Assembly: GCF_006345805.1 (NCBI RefSeq) | Contig: NC_043005.1 | Location: forward strand, 99,882,001 to 99,946,000 | From: Octopus sinensis | Lineage: Eukaryota | DNA: 64,000 nucleotides | Direction: 5' to 3' | Shown here: positions 651-64,000 of the stretch, one piece after another | How positions within the stretch are numbered: position 1 is the stretch's first letter | Layout: every line of letters begins with the position of its first letter | Notes under the pieces: model-generated | Database searches by the model: none | Seen by the model: only the letters and a program-made list of their open reading frames with translations | What the model was told of the DNA's origin: nothing | Made by a program: the position numbers and the translations under genes

Positions 651-781
651 CATCATCATCATCGTTTAACGTCTGCTTTCCATGCTAGCATGGGTTGCAC
701 GATTTTGATTGAGGTTTGGCGAACCAGATGGCTGCACCAGACTCCAATCTGATCTGGCAAAGTTTCTCCAGCTGGATGCCC
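651..781 (-). mobile_element. Short 3' UTR fragment of the RTE LINE family, (GAT)n tail
   Basis: Reverse complement of the 63270-63427 LINE end (catgctagcatgg...aaacgatgatgat). Confidence 0.85.
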
Positions 782-929
782 TATATATGTGAGTGTATGC
801 ATGGCGTATGTATGTGTGTATGCATGTGTGTGTGCATGCACATGCATATGTATGTGTATACATATATGTGTGAATCTATCTATCTATCTATATATATATA
901 TATATATTTTTTTAATTTTATTTATGCAC

Positions 930-7944: not shown

Positions 7945-8400
7945 TCATCATCATTTAATGTCCGCTTTCCATGCTAGCATGGGTTGGATGGTTTGACTGA
8001 GGGCTGGCGAACCAGATGGCTGCGCCAGACTCCAATCTGATCTGGCAAAGTTTCTACAACTGGATGCCCTTCCTAATGCCAACCACTCCGAGAGTGTAGT
8101 GGGTGCTTTTATGTGCCACCTGCACGAGGGCCAGTCAGGCAGTACTGGCAACGGTCATGCTCGAAAATGGTGTTTTTTTACGTGCCACCTGCACAGGAGT
8201 CAGTCCAGCGGCACTGGTAATGACCTCACTTGAATGTTTTGTTCATGTGCCACCAGCACAAGTGCCAGTAAGGCGACGTTGGTAACGATCATGCTCAGAT
8301 GGTGCTTTTTACATGCCCACCGGCATGGAAGCCAGATAGCTGCTCTGGCAGTGATCCCGCTCGGATGGATCTGTCAGTGCTCCACTGGCACAGGTGCCAG
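7945..8400 (-). mobile_element. RTE 3' UTR fragment with about 5 diverged ~60-bp repeat units
   Basis: Reverse complement of the 63240-63427 end plus repeated gtgcttttacgtgccacc-like units. Confidence 0.85.
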
Positions 8401-9025
8401 TCATCAAATTTGGTTTAATTAAATTTTGATTCAATAGTCATTAATGAGCAGGATTTCTGAAATGTGATCTCTTGCTTAATTCTGCACAACTATGAGTTTA
8501 CAGTTAGTGGCTGTCAACACTCTGACAGGAACTTGATGGTTGGATTTCTTTATATATCTAGAGATCCTTTAGGGGTCATTCTGTTCACTAGTGTTAATGG
8601 AAGAGGATCTTCAGCACATGTAAAGATTATGTTGGAATAGCTGATAGGAAAGTGGGGGGCAAAAGCCTAGTAAACCATCTCGAACAGAAGTGGACTTGAG
8701 ACAGCAGGCTTTGAGGCCTACATCGATGGTTTGTCATGATTACTGCACATGGAACTGAGCGTTTTGAGAAGCTAATTTCAACTGATGAAGCAATGGATGT
8801 GATGAACTGTTGTGTAGGGTTCAAAGTGCCAGAATTGGAGAGTCCTCTCTATGAGATTCATTTCCACTTGATGGCGAAAAGGGAGCACAAGTGAGCCGGT
8901 AAAAAAAAACACAGACAAACATATATGTCATATGATGTCTGTGATAGAGAGGAGTACACTGAAGGGGACACACATTATAGAGTGGATGATGGAAAATATA
9001 CTGTGACCTACAAATGAATAAGGTG

Positions 9026-59715: not shown

Positions 59716-60658
59716 TCCATATACATACTTGCATATACACACACACATCATGACCATCATTAGTTTATCTTCAATAATACATGCTAACATTTGTTGAATG
59801 GGTCATCAAGTGCTTGCATCAGTCCTTATTCATAAGAGAGACAGCTACATGAGGGTTAGTGGTAAGGAAGGTGAGTAGAAAAAAATACAATTGAAAGCAT
59901 AAAAGGAGAAAGAGAGAGAGAGAGAGAGAGCAATAAAATAAAGCATAGTTATAGAGAAGAGAGTATGGAGAGCAGAGGAAAGACTATATGATGACTGTGG
60001 GTAAGGTGATTGAATAGAAATAGCAATGGAATCATGATGTGGTTAAACAGAAGTGAGACAAATAATGGAGAAGGTACTGGACACAGGATACAAGAAAGGG
60101 AGGAAATGAGAGAGAGAGACTGAATGATGCTAATATTGAATAATAAGGAAGGGAGTAATGTGGGAGTCAGGGAGAGTAATAAAGACAAATGGGGATAAGA
60201 GAGGGAGAGTCGTGGATGGCAAAAATGAGTGGCAGGAAGAGGGGTAAAGAGAAAGTTGTCTTTTGTCATCCACTGATGTTGTCTTCAGTCTTTCAGTGAT
60301 ACTGTCTCATGTATTCCATTAGAATTCCACTGATTTGGCCTTCAGTCTCCTGCTGGTATAGTCTTCAGGGCATTCTCTGTTGCTAAACCAGAAATGACAC
60401 ACATGTCTATTCTTTGACTGTTATGTTGTAACTATGTTATCAGAGGCATCCATTAAGATATTGTATTGTCTCTTCATCAAAGCACAGCTTCTCAATGGTT
60501 CCTTTATATAAACAACCAATTCACATCATGTCTGTGTGTGGATGTGTAATCATGTCTTAAACTTATATCTTTAAACATGTCTCATATGGAGGTTGATGTA
60601 ATCCTCAGTAAATATAAGGTAAATCACTGCAAATATTATTATTATTATTATTATTATT

Positions 60659-60847
60659 GAGTGAGAGAGAAGTGCATGCCATCAAAGTGACACTGGGGTA
60701 AAATATACGAAGCCCAGTATACCCATCATGACTACCTGTCTGATAAGGGTACACCAGGCACATGCATCACAACCATATGTGCATGACATGGTGATCTCAT
60801 ATCAAGATAAACAGCACATGACCTTGCAGATGGGGCCCAGTTGGAAT
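60659..60847 (-). mobile_element. 3' half of the 530-bp (TAA)n element, split by the RTE
   Basis: Reverse complement of about 42660-42848. Confidence 0.85.
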
Positions 60848-63427
60848 AGGTAAAGGTGATGACTGCTACAAAGGTAAAGGTGATGACTGCTACAAAGGTA
60901 AAGGTGATGCCCTAGATACAAATAATTACAGGGGTATCAAGCTGTTGGATCAGGTGATGAAGGTTACAGAGAGGGTCATAAGCCAACTAATTAGAGAGAG
61001 AGTTAGTTTAGATGAGATGCAGTTTGGTTTTGTGCCAGGGAAAAGTACCACTGATGCTATATTCCTGGTAAGGCAGCTGCAGGAGAAATACCTAGCCAAA
61101 GATAAGCCCTGTACCTGGCTTTTGTTGACATGGAGAAAGCCTTCGACAGGGTCCCCCGATCCCTCATATGGTGGTCAATGAGGAAACTAGGAATAGAAGA
61201 ATGGTTAGTGAGAGCTGTGCAAGCCATGTACAGAGACGCTGCTAGTAAGGTGAGGGTTGGAAATGAGTACAGTGAAGAATTCCGGGTAGAGGTAGGGGTC
61301 CACCAAGGCTCAGTCCTCAGCCCCCTCCTATTTATCATAGTCCTCCAGGCAATAACGGAGGAATTCAAGACAGGATGCCCCTGGGAGCTCCTCTATGCTG
61401 ATGACCTTGCTCTAATTGCTGAGTCATTATCAGAACTGGAGAAGAAGTTTCAGGTGTGGAAGCATGGTTTAGAATCGAAGGGCCTTAGAGTCAACCTAGC
61501 TAAAACCAAAGTCGTAATAAGTAGGAAGGTAGACAAATCACAAACGCCTTCAGGTAGATGGCCCTGCTCGATCTGTAGAAAAGTGTAGGTAGAAACTCTA
61601 TAAGATGCACCAAGTGTAAGCTATGGACACATAAGAGGTGCAGCAATGTCATAGGAAGGCTAACTAGGAAGATGGTTTTTGTATGTGGCAGATGCTCGGG
61701 AGCATTAACCTCTGAAAATCTGCAGAAAACAACTTCCGTCACTTTCCAGGGGGAAAAACTAGAAGTAGTTGATAGCTTCCATTATCTTGGTGACCAAGTC
61801 AGTAGTGGGGGTGGGTGTGCTGAAAGTGTAACGGCTAGAGTAAGAATAGCCTGGGCAAAGTTTAGGGAGCTCTTACCTCTGTTGGTGACTAAAGGCCTCT
61901 CGCTCAGAGTAAAAGGCAGACTGTATGATGCATGTGTACGAACAGCCATGCTACATGGCAGTGAAACATGGGCCGTGACTGCTGAGGACATGCGTAAGCT
62001 CGCGAGAAATGAAGCTAGTATGCTCCGTTGGATGTGTAATGTCAGTGTTCATAGTCGACAGAGTGTAAGTACCTTGAGAGAAAAGTTGGACCTAAGAGGA
62101 ATCAGATGTTGTGTGCAAGAGAGACGATTGCGCTGGTATGGTCATGTGGTGAGAATGGATGAAGATAGGTGTGTGAAAAAGTGCCACACCCTGGCAGTTG
62201 AGGGGACCTGTGGAAGAGGTAGACCCAGGAAAACCTGGGTCGAGGTGGTGAAGCACGACCTTCGAACTCTAGGTCTCACCAAGGAAATGACCAGAGACCG
62301 AGACCTATGGAAGTATGCTGTGCGTGAGAAGACCCGGCAAGACCAGTGAGAACAATCAAAATCAAATCATATATCAGAAAGCAGGGGTTAAGTGACCCAT
62401 CTGTTCGTGTCCGCTGTCAGCCTCGTCTGGCACCCGTGCTGGTGATACGTAAAAGCACCATTCGCTCATGGCCGTTTGCCAGCTCTGCCTGGCCCCGTGT
62501 CGGTGGCACGTAAAAGCACCATCCGTTGGTGTTCGTTTCCAGCCTTGCCTGGCCCCGTGCCGGTGACACGTAAAAGCACCGTCCGTTCGTGGCCGTTGGC
62601 CAGCTCTGTCTGGCCCCGTGTCGGTGGCACGTAAAAGCACCATCCGTCCGTGTCCATTGCCAGCCTCGGCTGGCCCCCGTGCCGGTGACACGTAAAAGCA
62701 CCGTCCGCTCGTGGCCGTTTGCCAGCTCTGTCTGGCAACCGTGTCAGTGGCACGTAAAAGCACCATCTGTTCGCGTCCGTTGCCAGCCTCGGCTGGCCCC
62801 CGTGCCAGTGACACGTAAAAGTATCATCTGTTCGTGGCCGTTTGCCAGCTCTGTCTGGCCCCGTGTCGGTGGCACGTAAAAGCACCATCCGTCCGTGTCC
62901 GTTGCCAGCCTCGGCTGGCCCCCGTGCCGGTGACACGTAAAAGCACCGTCCGCTCGTGGCCGTTTGCCAGCTCTGTCTGGCAACCGTGTCGGTGGCACGT
63001 AAAAGCACCATCCATTCGCGTCCGTTGCCAGCCTCGGCTGGCCCCCGTGCCGGTGACACGTAAAAGCACCGTCCGTTCGTGGCCGGTTGCCAGCTCTGTC
63101 TGGCCCCGTGTCGGTGGCACGTAAAAGCACCATCCGTTCGTGTCCGTTGCCAGCATCGCCTGGCCCCGTGCCGGTGACACGTAAAAGCACCATCCGTTCG
63201 TGGCCGTTCGCCAGCTCTGTCTGGCACCTGTGCAGGTGGCACGTAAAAAACACCCACTACACTCGCGGAGTGGTTGGCGTTAGGAAGGGCATCCAGCCGT
63301 AGAAACACTGCCAGATCTGACTGGGCCTGACGAAGCCTTCCAGCTTCACAGACCCCAGTTGACCCGTCCAACCCATGCTAGCATGGAAAACGGACGCTAA
63401 ACGATGATGATGATGATGATGATGATG
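60848..63427 (+). mobile_element. Young 5'-truncated RTE LINE: RT coding region to stop 62349, 3' UTR with tandem array, (GAT)n tail
   Basis: NYRGIKLLDQVMK, QFGF.PGKSTTDAIF, DMEKAFDRVP, GVHQGSVLSPLLF, LLYADDL, F.YLG, LRWYGHV, GRGRPRKTW; two apparent 1-bp frameshifts (about 61105 and 61583). Confidence 0.95.
62397..63250 (+). repeat. GC-rich tandem array: 14 units of 60-62 bp with 2-mer and 4-mer higher-order repeats
   Basis: acgtaaaa anchors at 62447, 62508, 62568, 62629, 62690, 62752, 62813, 62874, 62935, 62997, 63058, 63119, 63179 and 63241. Confidence 0.95.
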
Positions 63428-63770
63428 AGTAGCCCATCCTGCTCAAAAGGTCCCTAAATAAGGGTTGTTTAAGGATGTTGAACGAACCACCCATGTTTCC
63501 AGAGGTGAATTATTCAAACCCCAAAGAATCCCTCTCAACACATGGCTATGATGCTCCCCAACTACTTCTGCTCGTGATCAGAGATGCACATATTGTCAGC
63601 CACTAAGGGACATGCTCAACTGGTTAAGGTCAAACAACTGACAAGCAAATCTGTGGTATTGAGCAGAATATTTGATGTGGCCCATCTTTTATACCAAGAC
63701 AAAACAATGTACATGATGACACTTCCAGTCAGTTAAGATCAGAAGCCATGAGAGCCACTGCCTGGGACTG

Positions 63771-63773
<3 letters not shown>
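63428..63773 (-). mobile_element. 5' half of the 530-bp (TAA)n element
   Basis: Reverse complement of 42319 to about 42645; followed by (ATT)n. Confidence 0.85.
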
Positions 63774-63811
<38 letters not shown>

Positions 63812-63849
63812 GGGTGGTGGACAGCTGAATCAGTTGAGTAACCAAAATA

Positions 63850-63980
63850 AATGTATTGAGTGCTGTTATTGTATGTTCTGAATTCAAATATGGCTGGGGT
63901 TGACTGTATTCCTTCATCACAATAAAATAAGAACCAGTAAAATACTCAGGTTAATCGACTCAAATGTACCCCCCTCCAAA
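63850..63980 (+). mobile_element. SINE family B, degenerate partial copy
   Basis: gttctgaattcaaat...ttgact..ccttcatc...aaaataagaaccag. Confidence 0.55.
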
Positions 63981-64000
63981 TACACACACACACACCCACA

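What the first reader, a model, noticed from the sequence alone, without database searches (positions are those of the whole stretch)
62397..63250. LINE 3' UTR array with higher-order structure and a candidate RNA pseudoknot in each unit
Fourteen ~61-bp units alternate between type A (cgtgtc-ggt-ggcacg) and type B (cgtgcc-ggt-gacacg). A 245-bp 4-mer is itself duplicated (62629-62873 and 62874-63118). Each unit can form a gccag-N6-ctggc hairpin and an H-type pseudoknot: CGUG(Y)/(R)CACG stem, loop GGUG pairing with CACC after a UAAAAG linker. A and B halves also pair perfectly across units (cgtgtc with gacacg, cgtgcc with ggcacg). The same core survives in independent copies with different unit numbers: one at 36111-36139, three at 32003-32080 and about five at 8100-8400. 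It is therefore a family-level, copy-number-variable module. Possible roles include RT recognition, RNA stabilisation or nuclease blocking, or a multimeric ribozyme-like element; RTEs are known to carry HDV-like ribozymes, though in the 5' UTR. It is not CRISPR: there are no unique spacers.
Basis: partly seen in the sequence, partly recalled or inferred. Interest (0 to 1): 0.7.

Follow-up and report, generated by a model that had tools for sequence, protein, structure and literature searches.

The report
Variable tandem repeat in octopus LINE tail
This is a 14-unit, 61-bp tandem repeat in the 3' untranslated region of a dead, 5'-truncated octopus LINE retrotransposon. It is a copy-number-variable minisatellite built from short GC-rich palindromes, an ordinary kind of repeat, and the proposed RNA pseudoknot or ribozyme has no support in the available copies.

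Summary
Window 62397-63253 holds 14 units of 60-63 bp that alternate between types A and B. A 245-bp four-unit block is duplicated at 95.9% identity. The array lies between the stop codon of a frameshifted, 5'-truncated reverse-transcriptase ORF and a ~150-bp tail ending in (GAT)n.

Related LINE copies in Octopus vulgaris and one ENA contig carry the same module with 4, 5 and 6 units.

The RNA reading does not hold up:
- There is no Rfam match.
- Single units fold no better than shuffled sequence, and RNAalifold finds no consensus fold.
- The pseudoknot stem GGUG:CACC shows no compensatory change; 17 of its 19 departures break the pair.
- The two short hairpins are mostly invariant, and their few double changes are mainly CpG-decay transitions.
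- The perfect A-to-B complementarity occurs only in this array, rests on one pair of substitutions copied by the duplication, and is equally strong on both strands.
- A 70%-identical relative joins its ORF directly to the terminal hairpin and has no array.

Best reading: a minisatellite expanded by unequal exchange or slippage. Low interest.

The parts
60886..62349 (+). 5'-truncated, frameshifted ORF remnant of a non-LTR retrotransposon (reverse transcriptase plus C-terminal region)
   Evidence: RVT_1 E=2e-19 on 61130-61588. ORFs 60945-61181, 61130-61588 and 61672-62349 lie in different frames. 90-91% nucleotide identity to O. vulgaris copy L002 and ENA contig L003, with the alignment starting at ~60886. 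Relatives carry a PHD-like zinc finger after the RT.
62350..62396 (+). short 3' UTR leader with an (AAATCA)-like microsatellite remnant; the ~110-nt spacer seen in L002, L003 and L005 is missing
   Evidence: Read directly. In the relatives the spacer ends with a diverged duplicate of the last ~24 nt of the ORF. The window copy goes from the stop codon straight to the microsatellite.
62397..63253 (+). array of 14 tandem units of 60-63 bp, alternating B/A types
   Evidence: CpG observed/expected 1.02 and GC 63%, against 0.37 in the ORF remnant and 0.34 in the window.
62397..62580 (+). older, more diverged edge units u1-u3
   Evidence: Identity to other units of the same type is 72-92%.
62629..62873 (+). 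higher-order repeat, copy 1 (four units)
   Evidence: 10 differences in 245 against copy 2. Nine are transitions, and most are CpG to TpG/CpA in this copy.
62874..63118 (+). higher-order repeat, copy 2 (four units)
63132..63253 (+). last two units (u13 type B, u14 ancestral type), the likely founders of the B/A dimer
   Evidence: u13 shares GCCAGCATCGCCTGGC with a unit of L005. The hairpin GCCAGCTCTGTCTGGC of u14 is the one found in all A units. The core of u14 matches the last unit of other copies.
63254..63402 (+). 3' tail shared with other copies of the family
   Evidence: 80-94% identity to the full-length tail matches, about a dozen, in the window (35960-36116, 7950-8105), L002, L003 and L005; partial, shorter matches also occur at window 661-782, 16978-17017 and 32077-32232 and in L002 and L005.
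63373..63386 (+). terminal palindrome CCATGCTAGCATGG, the candidate 3' stem-loop just before the microsatellite
   Evidence: The arms are conserved with a changed centre (CCATGC-AC-GCATGG) in a 70%-identical relative, L011, where the ORF joins it directly. It is present in the other tails.
63403..63428 (+). (GAT)n terminal microsatellite
   Evidence: TRF: period 3 x 8.7, 100% matches.
7950..8405 (-). 5'-truncated 3' end of a sister subfamily: five diverged units plus tail plus (GAT)n
   Evidence: The same unit order is seen in L002:12390-12813 and L005:6842-7330.
35960..36139 (-). 5'-truncated copy holding one core plus the tail
32003..32232 (+). more distant relative: three ~27-nt core-only units plus a partly matching tail

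Best explanation
The array is a minisatellite (VNTR) inside the 3' UTR of an octopus LINE family.

Family layout: ORF stop, spacer, (AAATCA)n, then 4-6 diverged ~61-66-bp units, a ~150-bp tail with a terminal palindromic hairpin, and (GAT)n. Each unit is GC-rich and holds two short inverted repeats: GCCAG/CTGGC and CGTGCC-GGT-GGCACG.

In this copy, or in its immediate source, the last two units (a B-like and an A-like unit) were duplicated as a dimer. A four-unit block was then duplicated again, giving 14 units. The mechanism is most likely unequal exchange or replication slippage, which the palindromes would favour (inferred).

The A/B signature is two transitions at the two partner positions of an originally perfect palindrome: C5>T in A and G11>A in B. 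The duplications copied it seven times. This automatically makes A and B complementary to each other on both strands.

The extra units need no RNA function. If any part of the 3' UTR is read by the reverse transcriptase, it is most likely the terminal hairpin plus (GAT)n and perhaps the last core. That last point is inferred by analogy with stringent LINEs and was not shown here.
For: (1) Position and anatomy are shown.

(2) Unit number varies among copies of the same LINE: 4 (L002), 5 (L003), 6 (L005) and 14 (window).

(3) The array has classic higher-order-repeat structure. Same-type units four apart are 92-98% identical, neighbouring units 75-87%, and edge units u1-u3 and u14 are the most diverged.

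(4) Nine of the 10 differences between the two four-unit blocks are transitions, mostly at CpG, which indicates genomic DNA decay after the duplication. Their 4% divergence is below the 9-10% between this copy and other copies of the family.

(5) Folding gives no sign of selection on the sense RNA.
- Monomer z-scores are -0.26, -1.97, +0.39, -1.73 and -1.15.
- The last unit plus tail scores +0.45.
- The dimer scores -2.40 on the + strand and -2.67 on the - strand, i.e. no strand asymmetry.
- RNAalifold on 33 units gives -1.15 kcal/mol and no hairpin.

(6) Pseudoknot stem 2 has 0 compensatory changes; 17 of 19 departures are breaks.

(7) Cross-unit complementarity is 5.7-5.9 of 6 Watson-Crick pairs in this array. 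In eight other arrays it is 4.35-4.39, no better than the local pairing of 4.56.

(8) At the Y/R pair, mismatched C.A states are about as frequent as U.G states among non-identical cores.

(9) There is no Rfam match.

(10) L011, a 70%-identical relative, has no array between its ORF and the terminal hairpin.
Against: - The core palindrome is better conserved than the rest of the unit. Its pairs are kept in 87.6% of cells against 85.0 +/- 0.9 in shuffles (4 of 500 shuffles reach the observed value).
- Two 70%-identical relatives keep a 6-bp stem through a compensatory change: TGTGTC...GACACA against TGTGCC...GGCACA.
- Arrays in all copies are far richer in CpG (observed/expected 0.65-1.02) than the ORF (0.37). 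This could mean constraint on the source elements.
- The A and B substitutions hit exactly the two partner positions. I estimate this at roughly 5-10% by chance.
- Type B also carries a G>T change that makes CGTGTC at the start of the unit complementary to GACACG.
- I could not date the insertion or see an orthologous empty or shorter allele. Whether the expansion preceded or followed insertion is inferred, not shown.
- Only about a dozen independent copies were available.
Confidence: 0.72

Rival explanations
1. Each unit is a functional RNA module made of simple hairpins, without a pseudoknot. It might be a binding site for the element's reverse transcriptase or ORF protein, or for a host protein, and more units would give a fitter element.
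For: - Hairpin 2 pairs are kept slightly above shuffles, with 14 cells changed on both sides.
- A compensatory U-A/C-G change separates L004 and L009.
- GCCAG/CTGGC is nearly invariant, with one A-U compensation.
- At least one core next to the tail is present in the copies that extend upstream of the tail; in the more distant copy at 32003-32232 only a short core variant survives.
- CpGs are retained in the arrays.
Against: - Most double changes are CG>TG plus CG>CA decay in a palindrome, which gives U-A by chance a quarter of the time.
- Single-hit wobble states and mismatch states are about equal.
- RNAalifold finds nothing, and monomer z-scores are unremarkable.
- Units with internal deletions persist (L005).
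- L011 has no array.
- The shuffle control is known to be exceeded by related sequences without any structure (note).
Confidence: 0.14
2. One reading: each unit folds into an H-type pseudoknot. Stem 1 is CGUGY/RCACG, and the loop GGUG pairs with CACC after a UAAAAG linker. The fold acts in RT recognition or blocks exonucleases, as an xrRNA does.
For: - The geometry is sterically possible: 5-bp stem 1, 4-bp stem 2, a 1-nt loop 1 and a 6-nt A-rich loop 3.
- GGUG and CACC are both well conserved (86% of cells paired).
- In type B cores, RNAfold prefers GGUG:CACC to the mismatched local hairpin.
Against: - Stem 2 shows 0 changes on both sides. There are 17 breaks and 2 wobbles, so the conservation is of sequence, not of pairing.
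- Variants shared by several copies, and so inherited from source elements, break it: AACC in unit 1 of L002, L003 and L005, and AAAC in a unit of the sister subfamily.
- G10 is needed by both stems.
- In the array a 14-bp inter-unit helix outcompetes it.
- The 32-nt core has z = -0.29 and -0.61.
- No Rfam pseudoknot or xrRNA family matches.
Confidence: 0.04
3. The A/B alternation was selected. Adjacent A and B palindromes form 14-bp inter-unit helices, turning the 3' UTR into a row of long hairpins. These could protect the RNA, or serve as double-stranded RNA substrates for ADAR editing or small-RNA pathways.
For: - The minimum-free-energy fold of the dimer and of the whole 3' UTR uses exactly these helices.
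- The dimer z-score is -2.40.
- The two substitutions sit at partner positions and are complementary in trans.
Against: - This rests on a single evolutionary event copied by duplication.
- It is not seen in any of eight other arrays.
- It is equally strong on the antisense strand. That fits a DNA palindrome, or templated (template-switch) mutation, rather than selection on the sense RNA.
- The copy is a dead, truncated element.
Confidence: 0.06
4. The array is a self-cleaving, multimeric ribozyme-like element of the kind found in other retroelements (HDV-like, hammerhead).
For: Only the general precedent that some retroelements carry ribozymes in repeated units (my own knowledge).
Against: No match to any Rfam family, including all ribozyme models, even at E <= 10 with permissive filters, and none at gathering score in the whole window. 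No conserved catalytic-core motif is visible in the units.
Confidence: 0.01

Closest known systems
VNTR / minisatellite regions inside retrotransposons, e.g. the GC-rich VNTR of hominid SVA elements and tandem repeats in LINE untranslated regions (my own knowledge). RTE-type 3' UTRs rich in short repeats are reported for octopus RTE-2_OV (PMC9115989).
   Same: Head-to-tail GC-rich units of tens of bp inside a non-coding part of a retroelement. Unit number differs between copies. Multimers are duplicated as blocks, and the array is inherited through retrotransposition and can change afterwards.
   Different: The unit sequence is unrelated. Here each unit carries two short palindromes, and the array shows a clean A/B dimer plus tetramer higher-order structure. 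PMC9115989 only says that a 'microsatellite' fills most of the ~600-nt 3' UTR, and I could not check whether that is the same element.
Higher-order repeats of satellite DNA, such as alpha satellite (my own knowledge)
   Same: Alternating monomer types. Multimer copies are more alike (96-98%) than neighbouring monomers (75-87%). Diverged monomers sit at the edges and homogenised units in the centre.
   Different: Tiny scale (0.86 kb), located inside a transposable element, and not centromeric.
3' stem-loop plus short tandem-repeat tail of 'stringent' LINEs and their SINE partners, e.g. eel UnaL2/UnaSINE1 (cited in PMC4758252; details from my own knowledge)
   Same: The element ends in a short tandem repeat, (GAT)n, preceded by a conserved palindromic hairpin. 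The 3' end is shared by many short copies.
   Different: That system concerns one terminal stem-loop, not a 61-bp array. RT recognition was not tested here. The short copies seen here look like 5'-truncated LINEs rather than true SINEs.
H-type pseudoknots with an A-rich third loop, and exonuclease-resistant RNAs of viral 3' UTRs (my own knowledge)
   Same: The order of the elements on paper (stem, loop that pairs downstream, A-rich linker) and tandem duplication in a 3' UTR.
   Different: No covariation in the second stem, no Rfam match and no thermodynamic signal.

Membership tests
Retrotransposon-internal minisatellite (VNTR) with higher-order repeat | Head-to-tail units of 10-100 bp far beyond chance | tested here: met
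   TRF: period 61 x 14, score 1039. The core pattern has 14 matches against 0.00 expected.
Retrotransposon-internal minisatellite (VNTR) with higher-order repeat | Lies inside the element, between the ORF stop and the 3' tail | tested here: met
   Stop at 62349, array 62397-63253, tail 63254-63402, (GAT)n 63403-63428. The order is the same in L002, L003 and L005.
Retrotransposon-internal minisatellite (VNTR) with higher-order repeat | Unit number differs among copies of the same family | tested here: met
   4, 5, 6 and 14 units.
Retrotransposon-internal minisatellite (VNTR) with higher-order repeat | Multimer copies are more similar than adjacent monomers; edges are more diverged | tested here: met
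   Identity matrix and 245-bp blocks at 95.9%.
Retrotransposon-internal minisatellite (VNTR) with higher-order repeat | Length polymorphism at one locus (alleles or orthologues) | not testable with these tools
   No second haplotype or orthologous locus could be fetched. The look-up of the window's own ORF found nothing.
H-type RNA pseudoknot element | Stem 1 supported by compensatory changes | tested here: inconclusive
   87.7% of cells paired. 11 cells changed on both sides, mostly CpG-decay doubles. Shuffle control: 19/500 for double changes and 10/500 for the covariation score. Related sequences can exceed shuffles without any structure.
H-type RNA pseudoknot element | Stem 2 (loop to downstream strand) supported by compensatory changes | tested here: not met
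   0 changes on both sides, 17 unpaired cells and 2 wobbles. Inherited variants AACC and AAAC break it.
H-type RNA pseudoknot element | Folding more stable than composition predicts | tested here: not met
   Core z = -0.29 and -0.61; units -0.26 to -1.97. Pseudoknot energies themselves were not computed, because no pseudoknot predictor was available.
Self-cleaving ribozymes (HDV-like, hammerhead, twister and others) | Match to a covariance model of a known ribozyme class | tested here: not met
   No ribozyme family up to E = 10 in 60000-64000, and none at gathering score in the window.
Self-cleaving ribozymes (HDV-like, hammerhead, twister and others) | Site-specific self-cleavage | not testable with these tools
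   Needs in vitro transcription.
Stringent LINE 3' recognition module (UnaL2-like) | Conserved stem-loop immediately upstream of a short tandem-repeat tail | tested here: met
   CCATGC-TA-GCATGG at 63373-63386 lies before (GAT)n. The arms are kept and the centre changed in L011. It is present in the other tails. This refers to the tail, not the array.
Stringent LINE 3' recognition module (UnaL2-like) | Reverse transcriptase requires that stem-loop | not testable with these tools
   Needs a retrotransposition assay.
   The copy is 5'-truncated at ~60886 and no clade-level reference set was available. Relatives carry a PHD-like zinc finger after the RT.
   (GAT)n at 63403-63428, and the same tail in other copies.
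CRISPR array | Identical repeats separated by unique spacers | tested here: not met
   The whole 61-bp period repeats, there are no unique spacers, and the context is eukaryotic.

The most novel reading that the evidence does not exclude
The ~61-bp unit, or at least its palindromic core followed by UAAAA-GCACC, could be a real RNA or DNA element of this LINE lineage. It would be kept in the source elements, as the CpG retention and the stem kept through a U-A/C-G swap in 70%-divergent relatives might suggest. The A/B higher-order array would then be a selected way to build long inter-unit helices that stabilise or mark the 3' end of the transcript. In a cephalopod such helices would also be natural ADAR substrates.
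Probability: 0.08. Interest if true: 0.6.

Novelty: new member of a known kind. Interest (0 to 1): 0.2.

Why it matters
Mostly it matters as a caution. GC-rich palindromic minisatellites inside abundant octopus LINE 3' ends look like structured RNAs and give long open frames on the antisense strand. One such array is annotated as a hypothetical protein in O. vulgaris (P0121). Knowing the architecture helps repeat annotation, and explains the length variation among copies. That architecture is a variable array, a shared tail, a terminal hairpin and (GAT)n. If the minority reading were true, it would give a testable 3'-UTR RNA element for an active cephalopod retrotransposon family.

Tried and rejected
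- A viral-contig scan for the core found one phage contig, L001, which is a chance match inside a coding region.
- A metagenome-contig scan for the tail found nothing.
- A protein search with the 301-aa antisense ORF of the array, meant to catch other long arrays, gave only one hit, P0121. That hit led to L005.
- Looking up the window's own ORF to find the source or an orthologous locus found nothing on record.
- The RT-domain search gave mostly 55-69% relatives from other animals. L006 and L007 carry no unit or tail. L008 and L010 were uninformative.
- RNAalifold gave no consensus fold.
- Literature searches found no description of this array.
- I considered a tRNA-derived SINE origin for the short copies. 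I rejected it for 8099-8405 and its relatives, because L005:6985-7330 continues upstream into LINE 3'-UTR spacer sequence.
- I considered coding potential of the array. I rejected it because open frames exist on both strands purely from the lack of stops, and the only homologue is the array-derived P0121.
Full report
1. WHAT IS THERE

Window 62397-63253 is a tandem array. TRF gives period 61 x 14.0 copies, period 122 x 7.0 (89% matches) and period 245 x 3.5 (91%). Cutting at the conserved GTAAAAG gives 14 units of 60-63 bp.

The 15-nt cores alternate strictly from unit 2 to unit 13. Type A is CGTGTC-GGT-GGCACG and type B is CGTGCC-GGT-GACACG. Unit 1 is a decayed B and unit 14 is TGTGCA-GGT-GGCACG. 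The 25-nt core pattern occurs 14 times in the window against 0.00 expected.

The two four-unit blocks 62629-62873 and 62874-63118 differ at 10 of 245 positions (96%).
- The 'three copies' at 32003-32080 are a short ~27-nt variant that lacks the palindrome and the GCCAG hairpin.
- In type B the local stem has a C.A mismatch.

2. CONTEXT

Upstream lies a reverse-transcriptase ORF remnant. RVT_1 matches at E=2e-19. The remnant is broken into three frames and is 5'-truncated at about 60886. Its stop codon is at 62349.

Downstream of the array come a ~150-bp tail (63254-63402), a perfect palindrome CCATGCTAGCATGG (63373-63386) and (GAT)n (63403-63428).

The closest protein relatives are from Octopus vulgaris and O. 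bimaculoides, at 85-91% identity over partial matches. More distant relatives (40-70%) occur in cnidarians and other molluscs and carry a PHD-like zinc finger after the RT. So this is the 3' UTR of a dead LINE copy in an octopus genome. I did not test the 'RTE' label.

3. THE SAME MODULE ELSEWHERE

Three further copies of the same LINE (90-96% nucleotide identity in the ORF end, 90-92% in the tail) were fetched:
- L002, O. vulgaris chromosome OX597814: 4 units.
- L003, an ENA contig: 5 units.
- L005, O. vulgaris OX597836: 6 units, two of them with internal deletions.

A sister subfamily has 4-5 units in a fixed order with unit-specific signatures. It is seen at window 8099-8405, L002:12390-12813 and L005:6842-7330. 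An array of a few diverged units was therefore already present in the source elements, and the module is family-level and variable in number.

In these relatives a ~110-nt spacer sits between the stop codon and the array and ends in a diverged copy of the ORF end. In the window copy that spacer is missing.

4. HOW THE 14 UNITS AROSE

The identity matrix shows the pattern of a higher-order repeat:
- u4/u8/u12 are 95-97% identical.
- u6/u10 and u5/u9 are each 98% identical.
- u7/u11 are 92% identical.
- Neighbouring units are only 75-87% identical.
- Edge units u1-u3 and u14 are the most diverged.

The GCCAG-loop-CTGGC hairpin of all A units is that of the last unit, u14. That of the B units is like u13 and like a unit of L005. 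So a B+A dimer taken from the last two units was multiplied, and then a tetramer was duplicated.

Nine of the 10 differences between the tetramer copies are transitions. Most are CpG to TpG/CpA in the first copy, which is what genomic decay after a DNA-level duplication looks like. Their 4% divergence is lower than the 9-10% between this copy and its relatives. The last duplication is therefore younger than the family burst. I infer, but cannot prove, that it happened at this locus. The mechanism, unequal exchange or slippage favoured by the palindromes, is also inferred.

5. TESTS OF THE RNA-STRUCTURE READING

(a) Rfam. There is no match to any family up to E = 10 over 60000-64000, apart from three obvious chance hits outside the array. 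Nothing reaches gathering score in the whole window.

(b) Thermodynamics.
- Single units score z = -0.26, -1.97, +0.39, -1.73 and -1.15.
- The 32-nt cores score -0.29 and -0.61.
- The last unit plus tail scores +0.45.
- Only the A+B dimer stands out, mildly: z = -2.40 on the sense strand and -2.67 on the antisense strand.
It is a 14-bp helix between the whole A palindrome and the whole B palindrome, and the same helices dominate the fold of the full 3' UTR.
- The equal signal on both strands points to DNA palindromy rather than selection on the transcript.

(c) Covariation was tested on 39 non-identical cores from about a dozen copies (alignment A1).
- Hairpin 2 pairs in 87.6% of cells against 85.0 +/- 0.9 after shuffling (4 of 500 shuffles reach it).
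- 14 cells are changed on both sides.
- Nearly all of these are CG>UA at the outer pair or GC>AU at the next pair. They are two CpG decays in a palindrome, which give a perfect pair a quarter of the time each.
- Single hits give wobble states and mismatch states about equally.
- At the Y/R pair the states are C-G 24, U.G 7, U-A 2 and unpaired 6.

(d) Pseudoknot stem GGUG:CACC (alignment A2). No change on both sides was found, and 17 of 19 departures break the pair. The variants AACC (first unit of L002, L003 and L005) and AAAC (one unit of the sister subfamily, seen in three copies) are inherited, so the source elements tolerated a broken stem.

(e) GCCAG/CTGGC is almost invariant, with one A-U compensation.

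(f) RNAalifold on 33 units returns -1.15 kcal/mol and neither hairpin.

(g) Cross-unit pairing was scored as Watson-Crick pairs out of 6.

| Arrays | Local | Cross-unit |
|---|---|---|
| Window array | 4.8 | 5.7-5.9 |
| Eight other arrays | 4.56 | 4.35-4.39 |

The A-B complementarity is therefore private to this array and rests on one C>T and one G>A change at the two partner positions of a once-perfect palindrome.

6. WHAT ARGUES FOR SOME CONSTRAINT

- The core is the best conserved part of the unit.
- Two 70%-identical relatives from other samples (L004, L009) carry one core with a 6-bp stem kept through a U-A / C-G swap and a longer loop.
- The arrays are much richer in CpG (observed/expected 0.65-1.02) than the ORF (0.37) or the window (0.34).
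- The partner-position coincidence in A and B has, by my rough estimate, a 5-10% chance.
- Type B also has a G>T change that makes the start of the unit (CGTGTC) complementary to GACACG.

Templated mutation within quasi-palindromes could produce such complementarity without selection (my own knowledge). These points keep a minority probability for a simple hairpin function of the core in source elements. They do not support the pseudoknot.

7. WHERE FUNCTION MORE LIKELY SITS

L011 is a 70%-identical relative. Its ORF runs directly into CCATGC-AC-GCATGG, then GGACGTAAAACG, then (GAT)n, with no array and no middle tail. The arms of the terminal palindrome are kept while its centre differs. By analogy with stringent LINEs (cited in PMC4758252), this terminal hairpin plus the microsatellite is the best candidate for the site read by the reverse transcriptase. 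This is inference.

8. COMPARISON AND NOVELTY

The closest known things are:
- VNTR regions inside retroelements.
- The repeat-rich 3' UTRs of RTE-type LINEs. PMC9115989 reports that a 'microsatellite' fills most of the ~600-nt 3' UTR of octopus RTE-2_OV.
- Higher-order repeats of satellites.

I found no paper that describes this particular array. It is a new member of a known kind. Interest is low, because the eye-catching features follow from duplication of a palindrome-bearing dimer.

9. LIMITS

- Only about a dozen independent copies from one or two octopus species were reachable.
- No orthologous locus, no subfamily consensus, no pseudoknot energy model and no expression data were available.
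- The pair counts mix mutations that arose after insertion with differences between source elements.

Noticed in passing
window 62397-63253 versus 60901-62349 and the whole window: The array is CpG-island-like: 85 CpGs, observed/expected 1.02, GC 63%. The adjacent ORF remnant has 0.37 and the window 0.34. Arrays in other copies are also CpG-rich (0.65-0.88). The cause is unclear; it could be youth of the array, lack of methylation, or constraint.
   Followed up: partly
window 62761-62781 and 63006-63026 versus 63389-63409: The start of the units (CACCATCYGTTCGCGTCCGTT) is 81% complementary to the very end of the tail (AACGGACGCTAAACGATGATG). In B-type units GTGTCCGTT pairs with AACGGACGC. RNAfold uses this pairing in the last unit plus tail, but the z-score is +0.45. 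It is possibly chance, or a trace of an inverted-duplication origin of the unit.
   Followed up: partly
L011:540-640: A 70%-identical LINE relative whose ORF runs straight into the terminal palindrome and (GAT)n, with no array and no middle tail. It is either a deletion derivative or a more basic 3' end.
   Followed up: no
L007:11364-13151: In an unidentified animal genome (ENA ERZ25069870), a LINE with 69% RT identity is followed directly by an unrelated 151-bp x 11.8 tandem array at 92% matches. It is unknown whether the array belongs to that element's 3' UTR.
   Followed up: no
window 62349-62396 versus L002:7243-7440, L003:790-960, L005:10690-10500 (-): The relatives have a ~110-nt spacer after the stop codon that ends in a diverged duplicate of the last ~24 nt of the ORF (gaagacctgttgaggcaagtga). 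The window copy lacks the spacer, as expected from a deletion between those two direct repeats.
   Followed up: partly
window 60861-60930: At the 5' junction of the truncated LINE, a 23-nt motif (GGTAAAGGTGATGACTGCTACAA) is repeated about 2.5 times. The first 22 nt of the LINE match appear twice.
   Followed up: no
L005:10001-10504 (protein P0121): An O. vulgaris 'hypothetical predicted protein' of 167 aa is called on the antisense strand of a 6-unit array plus tail. The window array likewise gives a 301-aa antisense ORF, 62466-63371. These are almost certainly annotation artefacts of a stop-free repeat.
   Followed up: partly
window 31870-31975: Just upstream of the 32003 copy lies a sequence whose reverse complement looks tRNA-like (GGAGGCGCAATGGCCCAGTGGTTAGGGCAGCGGACTCGCAGTCGGAGGATCGCAGTTTCGATTCCCAGACCGGGCA), probably the head of a tRNA-derived SINE. 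ARAGORN calls no tRNA in the window.
   Followed up: no
L005:338-819: An unrelated 39-bp x 12 tandem array at 95% matches in O. vulgaris.
   Followed up: no
L004:1100-1140 and L009:535-585: In 70%-identical relatives from other samples the single core has a 10-nt loop (GGTGTGTCRC). Its stem differs by a compensatory pair: TGTGTC/GACACA against TGTGCC/GGCACA. L004 also has a perfect 12-bp hairpin, AAGAATCACCAAGCTTGGTGATTCTT, near its 3' end.
   Followed up: partly
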